Assembly (NCBI RefSeq): GCF_001194135.2
Contig: NC_068997.1
Location: 34,076,151-34,109,652, forward strand
DNA from: Octopus bimaculoides
Lineage: Eukaryota
DNA: 33,502 nucleotides
Direction of reading: 5' to 3'
Shown here: piece by piece, positions 1,716 to 27,828 of the stretch
How positions within the stretch are numbered: position 1 is the first letter of the stretch
Layout: each line of letters begins with the position of its first letter
Program-made: the position numbers and the translations under genes
The notes under the pieces: generated by a model
Database searches by the model: none
What the model was told of the DNA's origin: nothing
What the model saw: only the letters and a program-made list of their open reading frames with translations

Positions 1716-2546
1716 AGATGGTATCAAAGAACACGGCGACTTTGAAAGCTACATTTATAATAGCTTATACTGAGTGCCAAAGGTAGTATGAAAAACAAAT
1801 GATTAAATGCAAGCGTGTCATCTCATACCTGTACATTTTTTGACCTTTCCAGTTTATATATAGAACGCATAAGAAGATTATTGACAGTTCGAATTCCTGT
1901 AGATTTTGATTTCTATGTTCAGTAGTAAGCTGTTGTCGGAGAATCACAGCCGACAAGAAAACGCAGTAAAATTTAGCAATCATTTCAATCAAGAGTTCAC
2001 TAGATCGAAGAGAATGTGAAAACTTGTTTAAAAGCAAATCTGGGCTTTTAAAGGGTATGTAATCACCATCGGAACCAAACACCTTGAAACCATCAGAAGA
2101 GAAAACGAAGACAGGAGAGAGGGGCTCGACAAAATTAATCTCGTCCTCCACCATCATTACCATGCAATCAATACCAGTAACTCTTCTATGCAATTGGCCT
2201 ACAGAGTCATTAACTGTTTCATTTAGGATTTGTGTAAATTTGAGCTAGGATGTAAAATATTTTTCTATGATGATATATTATATATAACTGAATATTTTAG
2301 GATGTTTAGGGCTGATGAAGTGAATTTACAAAATAATTTAACTAGAATTTACTTTCTCGGTGTATTTAGAGAAGATAAACTTACTAAACGGAACCAAAAG
2401 AGGATATTATTAAATAAACATAGGAAATGATTTTATTAGGCGACAAAAGTTTGGGAGTTGGTGTATTTAGCTGCTGAATGGGAAACGTTGGAAAATACAT
2501 TGGAGTATTGCGACCTCAATCTGCTTCAACATTAAAAGCACGATAA

Positions 2547-2760
2547 GTCGGCGAGCTGGTAGAATCGTTCCCGCGATGGACAAAATGTTTAACGGCTTTT
2601 TATCCGTCTTTACGTTATGATTTCAAATTTTGCCGAGGTCAATTTTGCCTTTCATCCTTTCCGGGTCGACAAAATAAGTACCAGCCAAACATTGGAGTCG
2701 ATGTAATCGACTAGTCCCCCACCCCCGAAATTGCTGGCCGTCTGCCAAAATTTGAAACCA
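2547..2760 (+). mobile_element. tRNA-related SINE, family B
   Basis: ggcgagctggtagaatcgtt...ttcaaattttgccgaggtcaattttgcctttcatcctttccgggtcgacaaaataagtacc...gccaaaatttgaaacca, shared with many other copies in the window. Confidence 0.85.
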
Positions 2761-9974: not shown

Positions 9975-10680
9975 CTGCACCGTAATTATATCCAAGTACC
10001 TTGACCTAGTGGCTTCCTTCCCCTCACATATTCATCACACATTCACGACACCAATCATGCTCTTCGTTTATTTAACTCTTTCTCTTTCCCTCCTGACCCC
10101 ACTCAACTTCTGTTCACTCTCGCCATCGAATCTCTGTATACGGCGATCCCGCACAATGAAAGTCTTGCGCTAAAACCCTTTCTAGACCTTCGTCCAGACC
10201 CTCAGCCCAACACCTCCACACTTCTTCGTTTGGCTGAATTTGTCCTCTCTCTCAACTTCTCGTTCGCGGGGGAGTTTTACCAACATTCTCGGGAGTGGCC
10301 ATGGGAACGAGAATGGGCCCCAACTATGCAAACCTGTTTTGAGGCCCGATTATTCTCACAGTGCACTGGTCTTACTCCTGAGCTATACAGTTGTTATATA
10401 GACGACTCCACTACAAACACTGATCCACATTCCTACCTCAATTTCTCCTCCTCCCGTCTTACCAAGCTCTCCATCCCCTACTCCCAGTTCATCCGTCTAC
10501 GCCGGTTCTGCAGTGATGACCATGATTTTGAGACCTAGTTTCAACTCATGGTTCACTACTTCACCCTACTTGGATATCTCCTCACTATTATCCAAACTGC
10601 CCTTTCCCGGGCACGATCCGTTGACCGTGCCTCTGGTATTTCCTCACCTCCAACCCTACATCTGCACACCGCCTAACTCA
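9975..10680 (+). pseudogene. Penelope-like element reverse transcriptase remnant
   Basis: Translates across frameshifts as ISKYLD...HDTNHALRLFNSF...LFTL(A)IESLYTAIPHNE...LLRLAEFVLSLNFSF.GEFYQ / GVAMGTRMGPNYANLF (10292 onward) / YIDD (10395-10406), then an internal deletion joining to TDPHSYLNFSSS...SIPYSQFIRLRRFCSDD. These are PLE RT and post-RT motifs. Confidence 0.85.
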
Positions 10681-10821
10681 GTTACATCTTAATAACTTAC
10701 ACGCACACGAGTGAGATGGGCCCCTATAACTATATAACACGCAACATGTTTAATTGCAAGTAAGCTCATAAGCACTCGTATATTATAATACTATTCAGTA
10801 TATTATATTGCATAATACTTC

Positions 10822-11036
10822 AGGCAACGAGCTGGCAGAGCTGTAAATACACAGAGCAAAATGCATAGCAGTATTTCGTCCGTTTTTACTTCCTGAGTTC
10901 AAATTCCGTCGAGATCGACTTTGCCTTTCATCCTTTCGGAACTAATAAAATAAGTTACAGTTGAGTTTTTGGGTCGATGCAATCGACTTTACCCCTCTCC
11001 CGAACTTGCTAGCTTTGTGCCAAAATTTGAAACCAA
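10822..11036 (+). mobile_element. SINE family B
   Basis: ggcaacgagctggcagag...gagttcaaattccgtcgagatcgactttgcctttcatcctttcgg...gtgccaaaatttgaaacca. Confidence 0.85.
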
Positions 11037-18555: not shown

Positions 18556-19178
18556 TTCAAAGCGTTTAGACCCCGTTGAAAAGCGTTAAGAGTGGAGTAA
18601 AAACCTACAGAATTGGTCCCCAGAGCAGCGGAAGAATGTTATTTTCTCGGACGAGTCATCCTTTACTTTATTTCCGACCACCGTCCGAGTATACGTGTGA
18701 AGACAGCCAAAAGAAGCATTTGACCCAGACTACCTTCTTCCAACTGTTAAGCATGAAGGAGGATCTGTGATGATTTGTGGGGTGGGGCTATATCTTAGAA
18801 ATCCGCCGGCCCAATGGTTTCACTTCATGATAGTGTACCACTTCACACAGCTAAAGTTGTTACTGAATGGTACGAAGAACATTCTAGTGAAATTGAACAT
18901 CTTATCTGGCCACCACAGTCCCCAGATCTCAATATTATTGAACATTTATGGTGCATTTTAGAAAAACAAGTAAGGAGTCGATATCCTCCACCATCATCAC
19001 TACAAGAACTGGAGACTGTTTTAGCTGAAGAATGGGCAAAAATTCCTTTGAAAACAATTCAAACTTTGTACAAGTCCATACCTCGTAGAATTCAAGCTGT
19101 AATTACTGCCAAAGGCAGTCCTACCCCATATTAAAATAAATTTGTTTGAAATTTTAAGGTGTTTCCATTAATTAGTCC
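18556..19178 (+). mobile_element. 5'-truncated Tc1-like transposon, copy B, with DD36E spacing
   Basis: High similarity to 27140-27810. Encodes IFSDESSF and DSVPLHTAK...WPPQSPDLNIIEHLW...RRIQAVITAKGSPTPY*. The right TIR starts at 19157 (aggtgtttccatta) and runs into N gap 19179-19188 and (TA)n. Has an internal deletion of about 100 bp. Confidence 0.92.
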
Positions 19179-19188
19179 NNNNNNNNNN

Positions 19189-19560: not shown

Positions 19561-20790
19561 TATACAGTTGCATTGTAAGGTTACATATCTGAACTTATAT
19601 CAATATCAGTTTCTGTACACAAGTGTAAAGATAGAGAAAGGCATATTTTTGCCTCTTTAGGTAACTCATCTGTTACGTTAGTTTAGAGGCTATGCTGTAG
19701 TAACTTTTAGTTTGCATATTTTAGTGACTCACGGTTGTGTTCCAAAAGTATCATGTAGGAACATGTATAAATATAACTGTCTGAGCATAATCAACACATA
19801 AAGTAAATTTTTGTCTTTTTAGTTAATCAGTTTATTACATTTTTGAAAAGGCTATAATCAAGTTATGGTTGCGTAGCATTCTAATATGGTCTTTCCTTAC
19901 TATAGGCTCCATGGTTACAGTTCATGAGGTTTCCAATTAAGGGGTGGGGTGGGTTTAATCCGAGTTGTTGGGATTATGGTTTGTATAGGTTAGGTGTAGT
20001 TTGCATTGTACTCTGTGAACAGGGGTTTAACTGTATGCATGCATCTAGGCAGTCGATCAGCAAATCTATAATTCGCGCTTTTGTCAACAGTATTGACAGC
20101 GATTTCTCGGAACATAGTAGGCATCTCCGGGATAGAAGTGTTGTGGGAACTCGCTTGTCTAATTATTGATCAGGTCAGGTTGTATTTTACCTTCTCTTCC
20201 TTGAGTCGCCAGATGAAATCGGCCAGTGATTTTGCGTGCCATTTAAGGATTTTTCGAAAGCTGGCGATGTGGTTTCTATATCTGTTTTTGAAAATATCAG
20301 CCAATGCACCGATATATATGTAGGGACCTCCTGTAGTATTTACAGCGCAATTGTACACGACAGTTCGGGTCTTGCATTGGCTACCCAGAGTACATTTCGA
20401 ACGCCCCCTACAATAGCATAGATTGTCAGACTTTGTTTGCGTGTGTACAGCCGGTACCTGTCCGGTCGGTTCCATTCACATTCGTGCTCATGGCTACCCT
20501 ATTATCATTTTTATTGCTTCTATGTGTGTTTATGTTGTTGTTTGAGTTGTGGCTATCATGTGTTGGTTGGTTAGTAAAGTAGTTGCAGTTGTTTTTTCTT
20601 TGTTGGTTAGTGTTATTGTTCGAGTCCTTGTTACTGTGAAGCGTTATGCAGTTGGTATTTGCAATGTCTCTAGGATTGTTATATATGTCTCCGTCAATTT
20701 TTGAGGGCCTATTTTCGATGCTGCCTGCACGCTGCCTTAGTTTTCAGTTAATTCTACGAATGTGGTGCTCCATATTCTATGAGATAGTAA
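19561..20790 (-). pseudogene. Penelope-like element 3' part with a GIY-YIG endonuclease remnant
   Basis: ORF 20475-20170: CYCRGRSKCTLGSQC...VVY...YIG...FKNRYRNHIASF...SLADFIWRLKE...LT, then *SII and frameshifted RCLLC..EK and RCMH downstream, matching the PLE-type GIY-YIG pattern. Confidence 0.8.
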
Positions 20791-23075: not shown

Positions 23076-23517
23076 TATTGAATTTAGGCTTAAACACCCC
23101 CCACCCCACCACCACGACTACAATCAAATAGTAAAGAATCTAGATACTACGAGCAACAATGATAATTATTGCCATTCATATTGTTTGATATCTTGTGCAC
23201 TTTCTCGTTAAAACTCGAGAAAACTTATGATGATAGTTCCTGTCGAAAACATAGTGTCAGGTTGCCGTTTGGAGAAATTAATGATTTCTAAAATTGAAAA
23301 TAATCATATCAAGAAACAACGATTCTTAACAGAGACAAGATCAAGATTACTGTGGGCAGATACGCAGCACAACGAATCGACGATAGATTATTGCCTTTTT
23401 TTTTTTTACCACAGAAAGTTCAAAGAGATTTGGATACAATACAACGAAAAAACCGGGCTATCTGGTGCTCAAATTTTATTACAACCTTTCTCTTAAAAAT
23501 ATACAAGAAGTATTAAT

Positions 23518-23735
23518 GATGGTGGGCTGACAGAACCGTTAGCACGCCGGACAAAATGCTTAACAGCATTTTGTCTGTCTTTATGCTTAGAGTACAAACT
23601 CCGGCGAGGTCAGCTTTGCCTTTCTTCCTTTCAGGATCGATAAAAAAATGTATTAGTGAAGTATTGAAGGCGGGAAATCGACCAGCCCTTCCCCCAAAAT
23701 TTCAGGTCTTGTGCCTGTAGCAGAAAGAATTATTA
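23518..23735 (+). mobile_element. SINE family B
   Basis: ggtgggctgacagaaccgttagcacgccggacaaaatgctt...cccccaaaatttcaggtcttgtgcc. Confidence 0.8.
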
Positions 23736-23740
23736 TTACT

Positions 23741-23955
23741 GGCAGCGAACTGGCAGAATCGGTACCATACCGGACAAGATGCTTAGCGGCATTTCTTCCG
23801 ACTCTATGTGCAGAGCTGAAATTCCGCTGAGATCGACTTTGCCTTTTATCCTTTCGGAATCGATGAAATAAGTTGAGCACCCGAGTCGCCGTAATCGATT
23901 AGATCTTTGCTCTCAAATTTCAGACATTGTGCCAATAATAAAATAAAAAAATTAT
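23741..23955 (+). mobile_element. SINE family B, in tandem behind the previous copy
   Basis: ggcagcgaactggcagaatcgg...aaattccgctgagatcgactttgccttttatcctttcgg...aaatttcagacattgtgcc. Confidence 0.8.
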
Positions 23956-25590: not shown

Positions 25591-25604
25591 GTCCAACACA
25601 TTAA

Positions 25605-25720
25605 TTCAAATTCCGCCGAGGTCGACTTTGCCTTTCATCCTTTCGGGGTCGATAAAATAAGTACCAGTGAAACACTGGGATCCATGTAATCGACCTTATC
25701 CCTTCAACCGAATTTGCGGC
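25605..25720 (+). mobile_element. SINE family B, 5'-truncated, low divergence
   Basis: ttcaaattccgccgaggtcgactttgcctttcatcctttcggggtcgataaaataagtaccagt. Confidence 0.85.
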
Positions 25721-26410: not shown

Positions 26411-26588
26411 ATAGATGATAGATATATAATATTAATGCGCTTAAAATGCTTTGTGTGTGCACTCGTGACCCAAATATGATGTGTATTTGGATATCTCCAT
26501 GTACATATATGCAATCAGATTGACAGGTGTATACACTTATAAGTATATACATCGCAAATGTATGTATGCGTGTATATATATATATATA

Positions 26589-27819
26589 CAGGGGTCGGAC
26601 AAAATAATGGGAACACCTAGCATCATAGCATCATAATTTTCAAATATCTATAAAACTGTCAAAAGCTTGTTTATTTTTATGATTTTTGATTTATGATTTT
26701 TGCTTCATATGTTTTGTTAAAACTGCTGTTTCTTTTCAGATATAATCAGAAAAAGGTAACTAAAATTCATTAAAATGACAGATATATCGAACTTTCAAAA
26801 AGGTCAAATTGTTGTTGCTCGAATGGCAGGTGCTAGCGTAACGAAAACAGCCGAAATGTTTGGTGTATCAAGAAGTACTACCTCGAAAGTAATGACAGCC
26901 TTTGAGAAGGAGGGAAAAACCACTTTGTCGAAACAAAACTCCGGAAGAAAAGTAAAACTTTCAGATAGGGACCATCGGTCTCTTACGGGAATTGTTAGAA
27001 AATATCCCCAAATTACTGCAGAGCTTAATGACCACCTCGAGAACCCAGTTTCCACAAAAACTGTTCGCCGGGAGCTGCACAAAGCCGGATTTCACGGTGG
27101 GGCTGCAATCAGAAAACCACTACGTTCAAAAATAAACTTTGCAAAGCGTTTAAAGTGGAGTAAAAATCTACAGAATTGGTCCCTAGAGCAGCGGAAGAAT
27201 GTTATTTTCTCGGACAAATCATCGTTTACCTTATTTTCTACCGCCGGCCAAGTATACGTGTGGAGACAGCCAAAAGAAAAATTTGACCCAGACTACCTTC
27301 TTCCAACTGTTAAACATGAAGGAGGATCTGTGATGGTTTGTGGGGGCTATATCTTGAAAATCCGACGGCCTAATGGTTTCACAACATGGCAGAATTAATA
27401 GTGAAGACTATTTAAGCATTTTATCTGATCAAATTCATCCTATGATTGTTGAACTGTTTCCGGGGGGAAACACAATCTTTCAGCTAAATTCTTACTGAAT
27501 GGCACGAGGAACATTCTCGTGAAGTCGAACATCTTATCTGGCCACCACAGTCTCCAGATCTCAATATTATTGAACATTTTATGGTTCATTTTAGAAAAGC
27601 AAGTAAGGAGTCGATATCCTCCACCATCATCACTACAAGAACTGGAGACGGTTTTAGCTGAAGAATGGACAAAAATTCTTTTGGAAACAATTCAAAGTTT
27701 GTATGCGTCTATACCTCGTAGAATTCAAGCTATAATTACTGCCAAAGGCGGTCCTACCCCAACCTAAAATAAATTTGTTTGAAATTTTTAGGTGTTTCCA
27801 TTATTTTGTCCAACCCCTG
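26589..27819 (+). mobile_element. Full-length Tc1-like DNA transposon, copy A, 1231 bp, DD36E (Incomer-like)
   Basis: 31-bp TIRs (caggggtcggacaaaataatgggaacaccta at 26589-26619 vs the reverse complement of 27789-27819, 29/31), TA on both sides (26587-88 and 27820-21), single transposase region. Confidence 0.97.
26775..27767 (+). pseudogene. Disrupted Tc1-family transposase
   Basis: The 207-aa ORF 26775-27398 carries paired-like HTH regions, NSGRK, VIFSDKSSF and PTVKHEGGSVMV, then frameshifts. The DNAPxH motif is deleted at tttcag|ctaaa (about 27483). The C-terminus TEW...WPPQSPDLNIIE...[15 protein letters not shown] is present in other frames. Confidence 0.93.
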
Positions 27820-27828
27820 TATAAGCGA

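What the first reader, a model, noticed from the sequence alone, without database searches (positions are those of the whole stretch)
26589..27819. DD36E (Incomer-like) Tc1 transposon in a probable cephalopod
Seen: 1231 bp, 31-bp TIRs and TA flanks. In copy B the catalytic D of DSVPLH and the E of NIIEH are separated by 36 residues. Copy A independently shows the same 2-residue-longer W-to-WP spacing (TEWHEEHSREVEHLIWPPQSPDLNIIE). Established, from memory: the DD36E Incomer family has about 1.2-kb elements with short TIRs and was described mainly from fishes, frogs, bats and a few arthropods. Motifs here (GASVTKTA, PVSTKTVRRELHK, SFTLFxTxGxVYVWRxPKE, SIPRRIxAxxxAKGGPTP) resemble teleost members as I recall them. 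Inference: an extension of host range to molluscs and a horizontal-transfer candidate.
Basis: partly seen in the sequence, partly recalled or inferred. Interest (0 to 1): 0.75.

Follow-up and report, generated by a model that had tools for sequence, protein, structure and literature searches.

The report
Dead Incomer-like DD36E Tc1 transposon copies
This is a broken, immobile copy (plus a second fragment) of an ordinary cut-and-paste Tc1/mariner DNA transposon from a lineage that is sister to the published DD36E "Incomer" family; the host could not be identified, so the claimed extension to molluscs is untested.

Summary
Window 26589-27819 is a 1231-bp element with 31-bp terminal inverted repeats (2 mismatches) and TA on both sides. 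A 5'-truncated second copy lies at about 18574-19178. Both copies are dead, and neither keeps a whole catalytic triad. Copy B, and every intact relative found in public data, has 36 residues between the second D and the E.

Intact relatives are 343-346 aa with D-90-D-36-E spacing, the same as published Incomer. They align to Incomer over 342 residues without a gap, at 47% identity. In my NJ trees the window's family and published Incomer are each monophyletic (100%). They are sisters with 84-88% support on full length and 57% on the DDE domain alone. The element is therefore Incomer-like, but it is not nested in any published Incomer cluster, and its repeat sequence differs.

Named members of the family come from an amphipod, spiders, fishes, a frog and a nematode, so one more host is unremarkable. 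The two window copies differ by about 12%, each about 5-6% from their common ancestor. They share a frameshift, so they derive from an already defective copy. I found no evidence of recent horizontal transfer into this host. The cephalopod origin could not be tested.

Verdict: a new member of a known kind, of low to moderate interest.

The parts
26587..26588 (.). TA flanking the 5' end of copy A (candidate target-site duplication)
   Evidence: Read directly. It lies at the end of a (TA)n run, so it is weak evidence on its own.
26589..26619 (+). 5' terminal inverted repeat of copy A (31 bp)
   Evidence: Nearly identical to the TIR of the intact relative L002.
26775..27398 (+). [quoted passage not shown] It gives 207 aa, of which about 190 are transposase: two helix-turn-helix motifs and the first catalytic D at 27213-27215. 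The last ~17 aa are out of frame after the +1 T at 27341. The part also carries a 15-bp in-frame deletion after 27004, a W-to-R change (CGG, about 27192-27194) and an HGGG-to-HEGG change.
   Evidence: Pfam HTH_Tnp_Tc3_2 (7.4e-13) and HTH_23. Defects mapped against L003.
27341..27764 (+). Broken C-terminal part of the transposase gene. Defects: +1 T at 27341, TGG-to-TGA stop at about 27356-27358, a 26-bp deletion after 27483 that removes the second catalytic D, and +1 T at 27577. The stretch WHEEHSREVEHLIWPPQSPDLNIIEH and the C-terminal [18 protein letters not shown] are still readable.
27789..27819 (-). 3' terminal inverted repeat of copy A (31 bp, 2 mismatches to the 5' repeat)
27820..27821 (.). 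TA flanking the 3' end of copy A
18574..19178 (+). Copy B, a 5'-truncated fragment corresponding to element positions ~551-1223. It has 5 extra bases at 18778-18782, of which one is the +1 T shared with copy A. It also has a TGG-to-TAG stop at about 18797-18799 and a 99-bp in-frame deletion after 18833. It keeps DSVPLH...NIIEH (36 residues between D and E) and the C-terminus. Its 3' TIR is cut by the N gap at 19179.
   Evidence: Pfam DDE_3 1.3e-11.

Best explanation
Copy A is a fossil of a cut-and-paste Tc1/mariner DNA transposon. When intact, such an element encodes one transposase of about 343-346 aa. That protein has an N-terminal paired-like helix-turn-helix DNA-binding region and a C-terminal DDE (RNase H-like) catalytic domain with D-90-D-36-E spacing. 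It binds the ~30-bp terminal inverted repeats, cuts the element out, and re-inserts it at a TA dinucleotide, which is duplicated.

The lineage is a sister clade of the published DD36E/Incomer family. It shares Incomer's two extra residues in the loop between the second D and the E.

In this window the element is dead. Copy A has two frameshifts, a premature stop, and a deletion that removes the second catalytic aspartate. Copy B is a truncated fragment.

The two copies share a frameshift and two substitutions. They therefore descend from a copy that was already defective. It was then either mobilised in trans by an autonomous element, landing 8.6 kb away in the same orientation, or copied by local duplication.

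Shown here: anatomy, homology, spacing, defects and tree position. Inferred from established knowledge of Tc1/mariner: the transposition mechanism, trans-mobilisation and local hopping.
For: - Anatomy: TIRs, TA flanks and size.
- Domains: Pfam HTH_Tnp_Tc3_2, HTH_23 and DDE_3.
- Relatives: 315 homologues at E<=1e-10. A tight group of 343-346-aa proteins is 55-79% identical to the composite, after which identity drops to 42% or less for ordinary Tc1.
- Spacing: members of that group in which my motif scan found both anchors have 36 residues between D and E, apart from two visibly damaged gene models (32 and 31). The next-best hits have 33, 34 or 38.
- Triad positions: D155/D246/E283 in P0001, identical to Incomer of Pygocentrus.
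- Full-length comparison: P0002 against Incomer gives 46.8% identity over 342 aa with no gaps and 335 bits. DD34E and DD38E proteins give 288 bits or less with 3-5 gaps. The result is reciprocal.
- Trees: NJ on 337 columns, three distance models, 200 bootstraps each. Window family 100%, published Incomer 100%, the two together 84-88%.
- An intact relative: L002 is 1271 bp, TA-flanked, has a 29-nt perfect TIR almost identical to the window's, and an open 343-aa ORF.
- Defects and shared defects.
- Age: a three-way comparison with L003 gives about 5-6% unique change per copy.
Against: - The sister relation to Incomer has only 57% bootstrap on the DDE domain alone. My trees are neighbour-joining, not maximum likelihood.
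- The TIR sequence shares only 15 of 29 positions with cluster-B Incomer (CACTCACCGG... against CAGGGGTTGG...).
- The G-rich box reads TVKHGGGS as in DD34E, not TVQAGGGG as in Incomer.
- No single window copy carries the whole triad, so the transposase used as query is a composite of two copies.
- The TA at the 5' end is part of a microsatellite.
Confidence: 0.85

Rival explanations
1. It is an ordinary DD34E-type Tc1 lineage that gained two loop residues independently. The DD36E spacing would then be convergent with Incomer and the 'Incomer-like' label would be misleading.
For: DDE-only bootstrap for family+Incomer is only 57%. The TIR sequences differ. The TVKHGGGS motif matches DD34E. D-to-E spacing varies among the nearest Tc1 hits, at 33, 34 and 38.
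Against: The two extra residues sit in the same loop, with a shared W-x-x-E-H motif. The full-length alignment to Incomer has no gaps, whereas every DD34E/DD38E alignment needs 3-5 gaps and scores lower, and this is reciprocal. Full-length bootstrap is 84-88% under three distance models. D1, D2 and E sit at identical positions.
Confidence: 0.12
2. It entered a cephalopod or other mollusc recently by horizontal transfer from fish or arthropods.
For: The family is patchy across phyla with high identities. Amphipod Trinorchestia against fish Sphaeramia is 94% over 103 aa. Nematode Strongyloides is 82% and frog Dendrobates 83-88% to relatives. No open paper in the library reports DD36E/Incomer in cephalopods. 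The TLEWI preprint found its own DD36E group absent from cephalopods.
Against: The host is unidentified. The window copies differ by about 12% and are full of defects, so they are not recent. Their closest relative, L003, is 85-92% identical in DNA and is an anonymous metagenome contig with similar microsatellite flanks. It may simply be the same or a related host. The closest named relatives are only 68-73% identical in protein. A cephalopod repeat survey already reports abundant Tc1 elements with database hits to aquatic vertebrates, and considers vertical descent equally likely (PMC8967140).
Confidence: 0.15
3. It is a domesticated or host-gene-like DD36E element of the mollusc TLEWI type.
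For: TLEWI elements are mollusc Tc1-like sequences with DD36E spacing.
Against: TLEWI elements lack TIRs and target duplications, carry spliceosomal introns, are 2.2-11.5 kb long, and have a YQDNDSKH motif. This element has TIRs and TA flanks, is 1.2 kb with no introns, reads QDDNAP(L/I)H, and its reading frames are broken.
Confidence: 0.01

Closest known systems
DD36E/Incomer (IC) family of Tc1/mariner transposons (Sang et al. 2019, PMC6875036)
   Same: Element about 1.2 kb. Short TIRs: 31 bp here, 22-32 bp in IC. TA target. A single ORF without introns, of 343-346 aa. D-90-D-36-E with the triad at identical positions. The extra two residues lie in the same loop with a shared W-x-x-E-H. A DNAPxH motif at the second D. 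N-terminal DLSDFxRGxxVGAR...SR.T.S.V. Full-length alignment without gaps. Sister position in the trees. Patchy cross-phylum distribution.
   Different: It forms its own 100%-supported clade outside all sampled published IC (fish and hagfish, insects and spiders in the full-length tree; frog and bat sequences as well in the DDE-domain tree). It is about 45% identical to IC in the DDE domain and 40-47% over the full length. The TIR sequence differs (CAGGGGTTGGACAAAATAATGG... against CACTCACCGGCCACTTTATTAGG...). The G-rich box reads KHGGGS rather than QAGGGG. Named hosts include an amphipod and a nematode, which are not in the published IC host list.
DD34E/Tc1 (Sleeping Beauty, Passport, Frog Prince, Quetzal)
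   Same: Same superfamily, domain order, TA target and mechanism. Shares TVKHGGGSVMVWG and the C-terminal PRRxxAVxxAKGGxTxY.
   Different: 34 rather than 36 residues between D and E. DNDPKH rather than DNAPxH. Alignments need gaps. 38-40% identity in the DDE domain.
TLEWI (Tc1-like elements with introns, DD36E, bivalves; bioRxiv 10.1101/656579)
   Same: Tc1-like with DD36E spacing. Described from molluscs.
   Different: TLEWI has introns, no TIR or target duplication, low copy number, lengths of 2-11 kb, a YQDNDSKH motif, and was reported absent from cephalopods.
DD38E/Intruder and DD35E/Traveler
   Same: Sibling Tc1-like families that are likewise defined by spacing plus monophyly. DD38E-spaced proteins were among the next-best database hits.
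   Different: Different spacing (38 or 35). The DD38E-spaced hits fall outside the window-family-plus-Incomer group in my trees. No Traveler sequence was included in my trees.

Membership tests
Tc1/mariner superfamily | DDE_3-type catalytic domain plus N-terminal paired-like HTH domains | tested here: met
   Pfam DDE_3 1.3e-11, HTH_Tnp_Tc3_2 7.4e-13, HTH_23 1.3e-6.
Tc1/mariner superfamily | Terminal inverted repeats and a TA target-site duplication | tested here: met
   31-bp TIRs with 0 expected by chance. TA on both sides. The intact relative L002 shows the same. No empty site was available to prove duplication.
DD36E/Incomer | 36 residues between the second D and the E | tested here: met
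   Copy B has 36. Intact relatives whose motifs could be scanned have 36. Neither window copy has the whole triad.
DD36E/Incomer | Element about 1.2 kb with a single intron-less ORF of about 346 aa | tested here: met
   Copy A is 1231 bp. L002 is 1271 bp with a 343-aa ORF. P0001 is 346 aa. The published range is 1169-1229 bp and 314-382 aa. The window ORF itself is broken.
DD36E/Incomer | Short TIRs of 22-32 bp | tested here: met
   31 bp.
DD36E/Incomer | Transposase groups with Incomer to the exclusion of other Tc1/mariner families in a phylogeny | tested here: inconclusive
   It is sister to all sampled published IC, with 84-88% NJ bootstrap on full length and 57% on the DDE domain alone. 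It is not nested in any published cluster. No maximum-likelihood tree, and no TR, ZB or TLEWI references.
DD36E/Incomer | TIR sequence resembles that of published members | tested here: inconclusive
   15 of 29 positions match cluster-B IC. Termini are CAGGG here against CACTC, CACTG, CACAC, CAAAG and CAGTC in IC.
DD34E/Tc1 | 34 residues between the second D and the E | tested here: not met
   36 in copy B and in intact relatives.
TLEWI (mollusc DD36E with introns) | Spliceosomal introns, no TIRs or TSD, YQDNDSKH motif | tested here: not met
   TIRs and TA are present. The coding sequence is collinear with intron-less relatives. The motif is QDDNAP(L/I)H.

The most novel reading that the evidence does not exclude
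The window's family may be a so far undescribed deep DD36E lineage, sister to Incomer. It may still be active in some hosts: L002 is an intact 1271-bp copy with perfect TIRs, and its protein cluster at 90% identity has 44 members. It may be moving horizontally among crustaceans, fishes, frogs, nematodes and the window's host. If that host is a cephalopod, this would be the first DD36E/Incomer-type element with TIRs reported from Lophotrochozoa.
Probability: 0.3. Interest if true: 0.4.

Novelty: new member of a known kind. Interest (0 to 1): 0.25.

Why it matters
It matters little for the biology of this locus, which holds a dead transposon in a microsatellite-rich stretch.

For transposon taxonomy it shows that DD36E spacing is shared by a second, well-separated clade next to published Incomer. 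That clade has a wide and patchy host range and has apparently intact copies in public data. This bears on whether Incomer should be widened or split. It also adds one more Tc1-like lineage to the catalogue of likely horizontally transferred elements.

Intact members such as L002 could be tested as new cut-and-paste vectors, but many such vectors already exist.

Tried and rejected
Attempts to identify the host:
- Exact look-up of the two window ORFs in the assembly index found nothing on record.
- A protein search with an RT-like fragment (10005-10535) gave only two anonymous hits.
- A protein search with a chimera of eight other open stretches gave no hit.
- Pfam on ten other ORFs gave nothing meaningful.
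- Rfam and tRNA scans found nothing.
- A literature search for the sample accessions of the closest contigs found nothing.

The host therefore remains unknown. The microsatellite richness, the RT-like fragments and the short dispersed repeats fit an octopus (PMC8967140). From my own knowledge, they would also fit other invertebrates such as decapod crustaceans.

Other dead ends:
- Two scans of viral contigs for a possible transfer vector found no relative.
- No paper in the library holds the TIR or the motif strings.

Rejected readings:
- TLEWI membership, which fails on all its defining features.
- Contamination or misassembly. Both copies sit in the same kind of microsatellite context as the rest of the window.

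Not run: structure prediction and the representative-protein search. The fold is not in question, and that library carries no names.

Full report
**What is there**

The stretch 26589-27819 is 1231 bp long. It begins with CAGGGGTCGGACAAAATAATGGGAACACCTA and ends with the inverted complement of that sequence, with two mismatches. Dinucleotide-preserving shuffles of the window gave no such pair. TA lies immediately outside each end. The 5' TA is the last unit of a (TA)n run, and both flanks are (TA)n/(TATG)n microsatellite.

A BLASTN of the element against the window finds a second partial copy at about 18574-19178 on the same strand. It is 88.6-91.6% identical to copy A. It lacks the 5' half, and its 3' repeat runs into a 10-N gap.

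**Coding content**

Copy A has an open 207-aa N-terminal piece at 26775-27398. The rest of a Tc1-type transposase is readable in the other two frames. Pfam finds HTH_Tnp_Tc3_2 and HTH_23 in the N-terminal piece and DDE_3 in the C-terminal piece of copy B.

Copy B reads DSVPLHTAKVVTEWYEEHSSEIEHLIWPPQSPDLNIIE, which has 36 residues between D and E. Copy A has the same 12-residue W-to-WP loop.

**Defects**

I aligned both copies to the closest relative with an intact motif, L003. Copy A has:
- a 15-bp in-frame deletion after 27004;
- an extra T at 27341;
- a TGG-to-TGA stop at about 27356;
- a 26-bp deletion after 27483 that removes the second catalytic aspartate;
- an extra T at 27577.

Copy B has:
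- the same extra T, plus four more bases, at 18778-18782;
- a TGG-to-TAG stop in the same codon as copy A's stop;
- a 99-bp in-frame deletion after 18833.

Both copies share a W-to-R codon (CGG) and an HGGG-to-HEGG change.

The shared frameshift means both copies descend from a copy that was already defective.

Copy B's D codon lies at the edge of its 99-bp deletion. Whether it is the ancestral catalytic codon is ambiguous. The spacing inference does not depend on this, because the NAPxH-to-E stretch is collinear with intact relatives.

**Relatives**

I joined the readable pieces of the two copies into a 338-aa composite transposase and searched with it. It finds 315 proteins at E<=1e-10.

A compact group of 343-346-aa proteins is 55-79% identical to the composite. 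Identity then drops to 42% or less for ordinary Tc1 proteins. In that group, the proteins in which my motif scan found both anchors have 36 residues between D and E, apart from two visibly damaged gene models (32 and 31). The next-best hits have 33, 34 or 38.

Named members or close cluster mates come from these hosts:
- the amphipod Trinorchestia longiramus;
- the spiders Araneus, Trichonephila and Parasteatoda;
- the fishes Paramormyrops, Sphaeramia and Cirrhinus;
- the frog Dendrobates tinctorius;
- the nematode Strongyloides venezuelensis.

The amphipod and cardinalfish proteins are 94% identical over 103 aa. That is the usual Tc1/mariner picture of patchy, probably horizontal spread. No mollusc name appears.

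Two contigs are especially informative:
- L002 (ENA metagenome contig) carries a complete 1271-bp element. It is TA-flanked, has a perfect 29-nt TIR almost identical to the window's, and has an open 343-aa ORF.
- L003 (another metagenome contig, flanked by (TTG)n and (TA)n) belongs to the same subfamily as the window copies. It is 85% identical in DNA to copy A and 90-92% to copy B. It keeps QDDNAPLH.

Over 608 three-way columns, 39 changes are unique to A, 30 are unique to B, and 28 are either unique to L003 or shared by A and B. That amounts to about 5-6% per lineage. The copies are not young.

**Is it Incomer?**

I took published Incomer sequences from the supplements of Sang et al. 2019 (PMC6875036).

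- The composite aligns to the Incomer DDE domains without a gap at 39-48% identity. DD34E references give 38-40% with gaps.
- The intact relative P0002 aligns to full-length Incomer of Pygocentrus over 342 residues with no gap, at 46.8% identity and 335 bits. The best DD34E and DD38E proteins give 288 bits or less with 3-5 gaps. The result is reciprocal.
- The triad sits at D155, D246 and E283 in both P0001 and Incomer.
- NJ tree on the DDE domain (150 columns, 300 bootstraps): window family 90%, published Incomer 96%, the two together 57%.
- NJ tree on full-length proteins (337 columns, three distance models, 200 bootstraps each): 100%, 100% and 84-88%.
- Mean DDE-domain identity is 45% between the two clades. 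It is 58% within Incomer, with a minimum of 44%.
- The TIR differs from cluster-B Incomer, with 15 of 29 positions the same.

The element is therefore best described as a sister clade of published Incomer. Whether it counts as a new deep cluster of Incomer depends on where the family boundary is drawn. It is not nested within any published cluster.

It is not a TLEWI element. Those mollusc DD36E sequences have introns, no TIRs and a YQDNDSKH motif.

**Host and horizontal transfer**

Nothing I could run identifies the host:
- The window ORFs are not on record.
- Other coding-like pieces have only anonymous relatives or none.
- There are no Rfam or tRNA matches.
- The sample accessions of the closest contigs are not in the literature library.

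About 12% of the window is N, in 12 gaps, and the window is dense in microsatellites. It also holds an RT-like fragment and a ~200-bp dispersed repeat in five copies.

A published survey says Tc1, Penelope and tRNA-derived SINEs are abundant in octopus genomes. It also reports that cephalopod Tc1 elements have database hits to aquatic vertebrates, and it considers vertical descent equally likely (PMC8967140). So the window is compatible with a cephalopod, but not shown to be one.

No open paper in the library reports DD36E/Incomer from cephalopods. Later work added bees to the Incomer host list. Subscription journals are not covered by that library.

Two scans of viral contigs for a possible vector found no relative.

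**Verdict**

This is a real, correctly observed, dead Tc1/mariner element with DD36E ancestry. It is Incomer-like, but in a separate sister clade. The mollusc host-range extension and the horizontal-transfer inference are untested, and the old, defective state of the copies does not support recent transfer. It is a new member of a known kind, and interest is low to moderate.

Noticed in passing
window 10005-10535 (+) and 20173-20475 (-): A 177-aa stop-free stretch with reverse-transcriptase-like motifs (...LYTAIPH..., YIDD), and a 101-aa ORF whose YIYIGALADIFKNRYRNH motif reminds me of the GIY-YIG endonuclease of Penelope-like elements. That resemblance is from memory. Pfam found nothing for either. 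The RT-like piece has only two anonymous homologues, at 45% and 63% identity.
   Followed up: partly
window 2537-2734, 10813-11010, 23508-23651, 23731-23874, 25600-25717: A dispersed repeat of about 120-200 bp is present five times in 33 kb at 64-80% identity. It is probably a SINE-like family. B-box-like sequences (AGTTCGATTCC and similar) occur at 1452, 6738, 20617 and 29705, barely above chance.
   Followed up: no
whole window: A draft-quality scaffold. There are 12 runs of N (10-832 bp, 4119 N in total) and 33 tandem-repeat arrays of types TA, AC, AG, TATG, TATC, ATT, ATC, TCT and others. The gaps mostly abut microsatellites. Both transposon copies sit in (TA)n/(TATG)n tracts, which are natural TA targets.
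   Followed up: partly
L002 152-1422: An apparently intact, possibly active member of the family on an ENA metagenome contig. It is 1271 bp, TA-flanked, and has a perfect 29-nt TIR and an open 343-aa ORF. Its protein cluster at 90% identity has 44 members.
   Followed up: partly
P0070 and P0117 (Dendrobates tinctorius gene models): Two annotated frog proteins are chimeras that contain fragments of this transposase family. One is named 'cytosolic arginine sensor for mTORC1 subunit 1 isoform X1'. They are likely gene-model artefacts or exonised transposon pieces.
   Followed up: no
P0050 (Strongyloides venezuelensis) against P0155 (Trinorchestia longiramus): A protein from a parasitic nematode is 82% identical over 174 aa to the amphipod element. 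This is either another horizontal-transfer case or contamination in one of the assemblies.
   Followed up: no
L004 7954-8758: A relative on a 15.6-kb ENA contig packed with other transposon genes (Tc5, RVT_1, DDE_1, piggyBac-type). It carries an inverted partial duplicate of its own 5' part: element positions ~551-681 match both strands.
   Followed up: no
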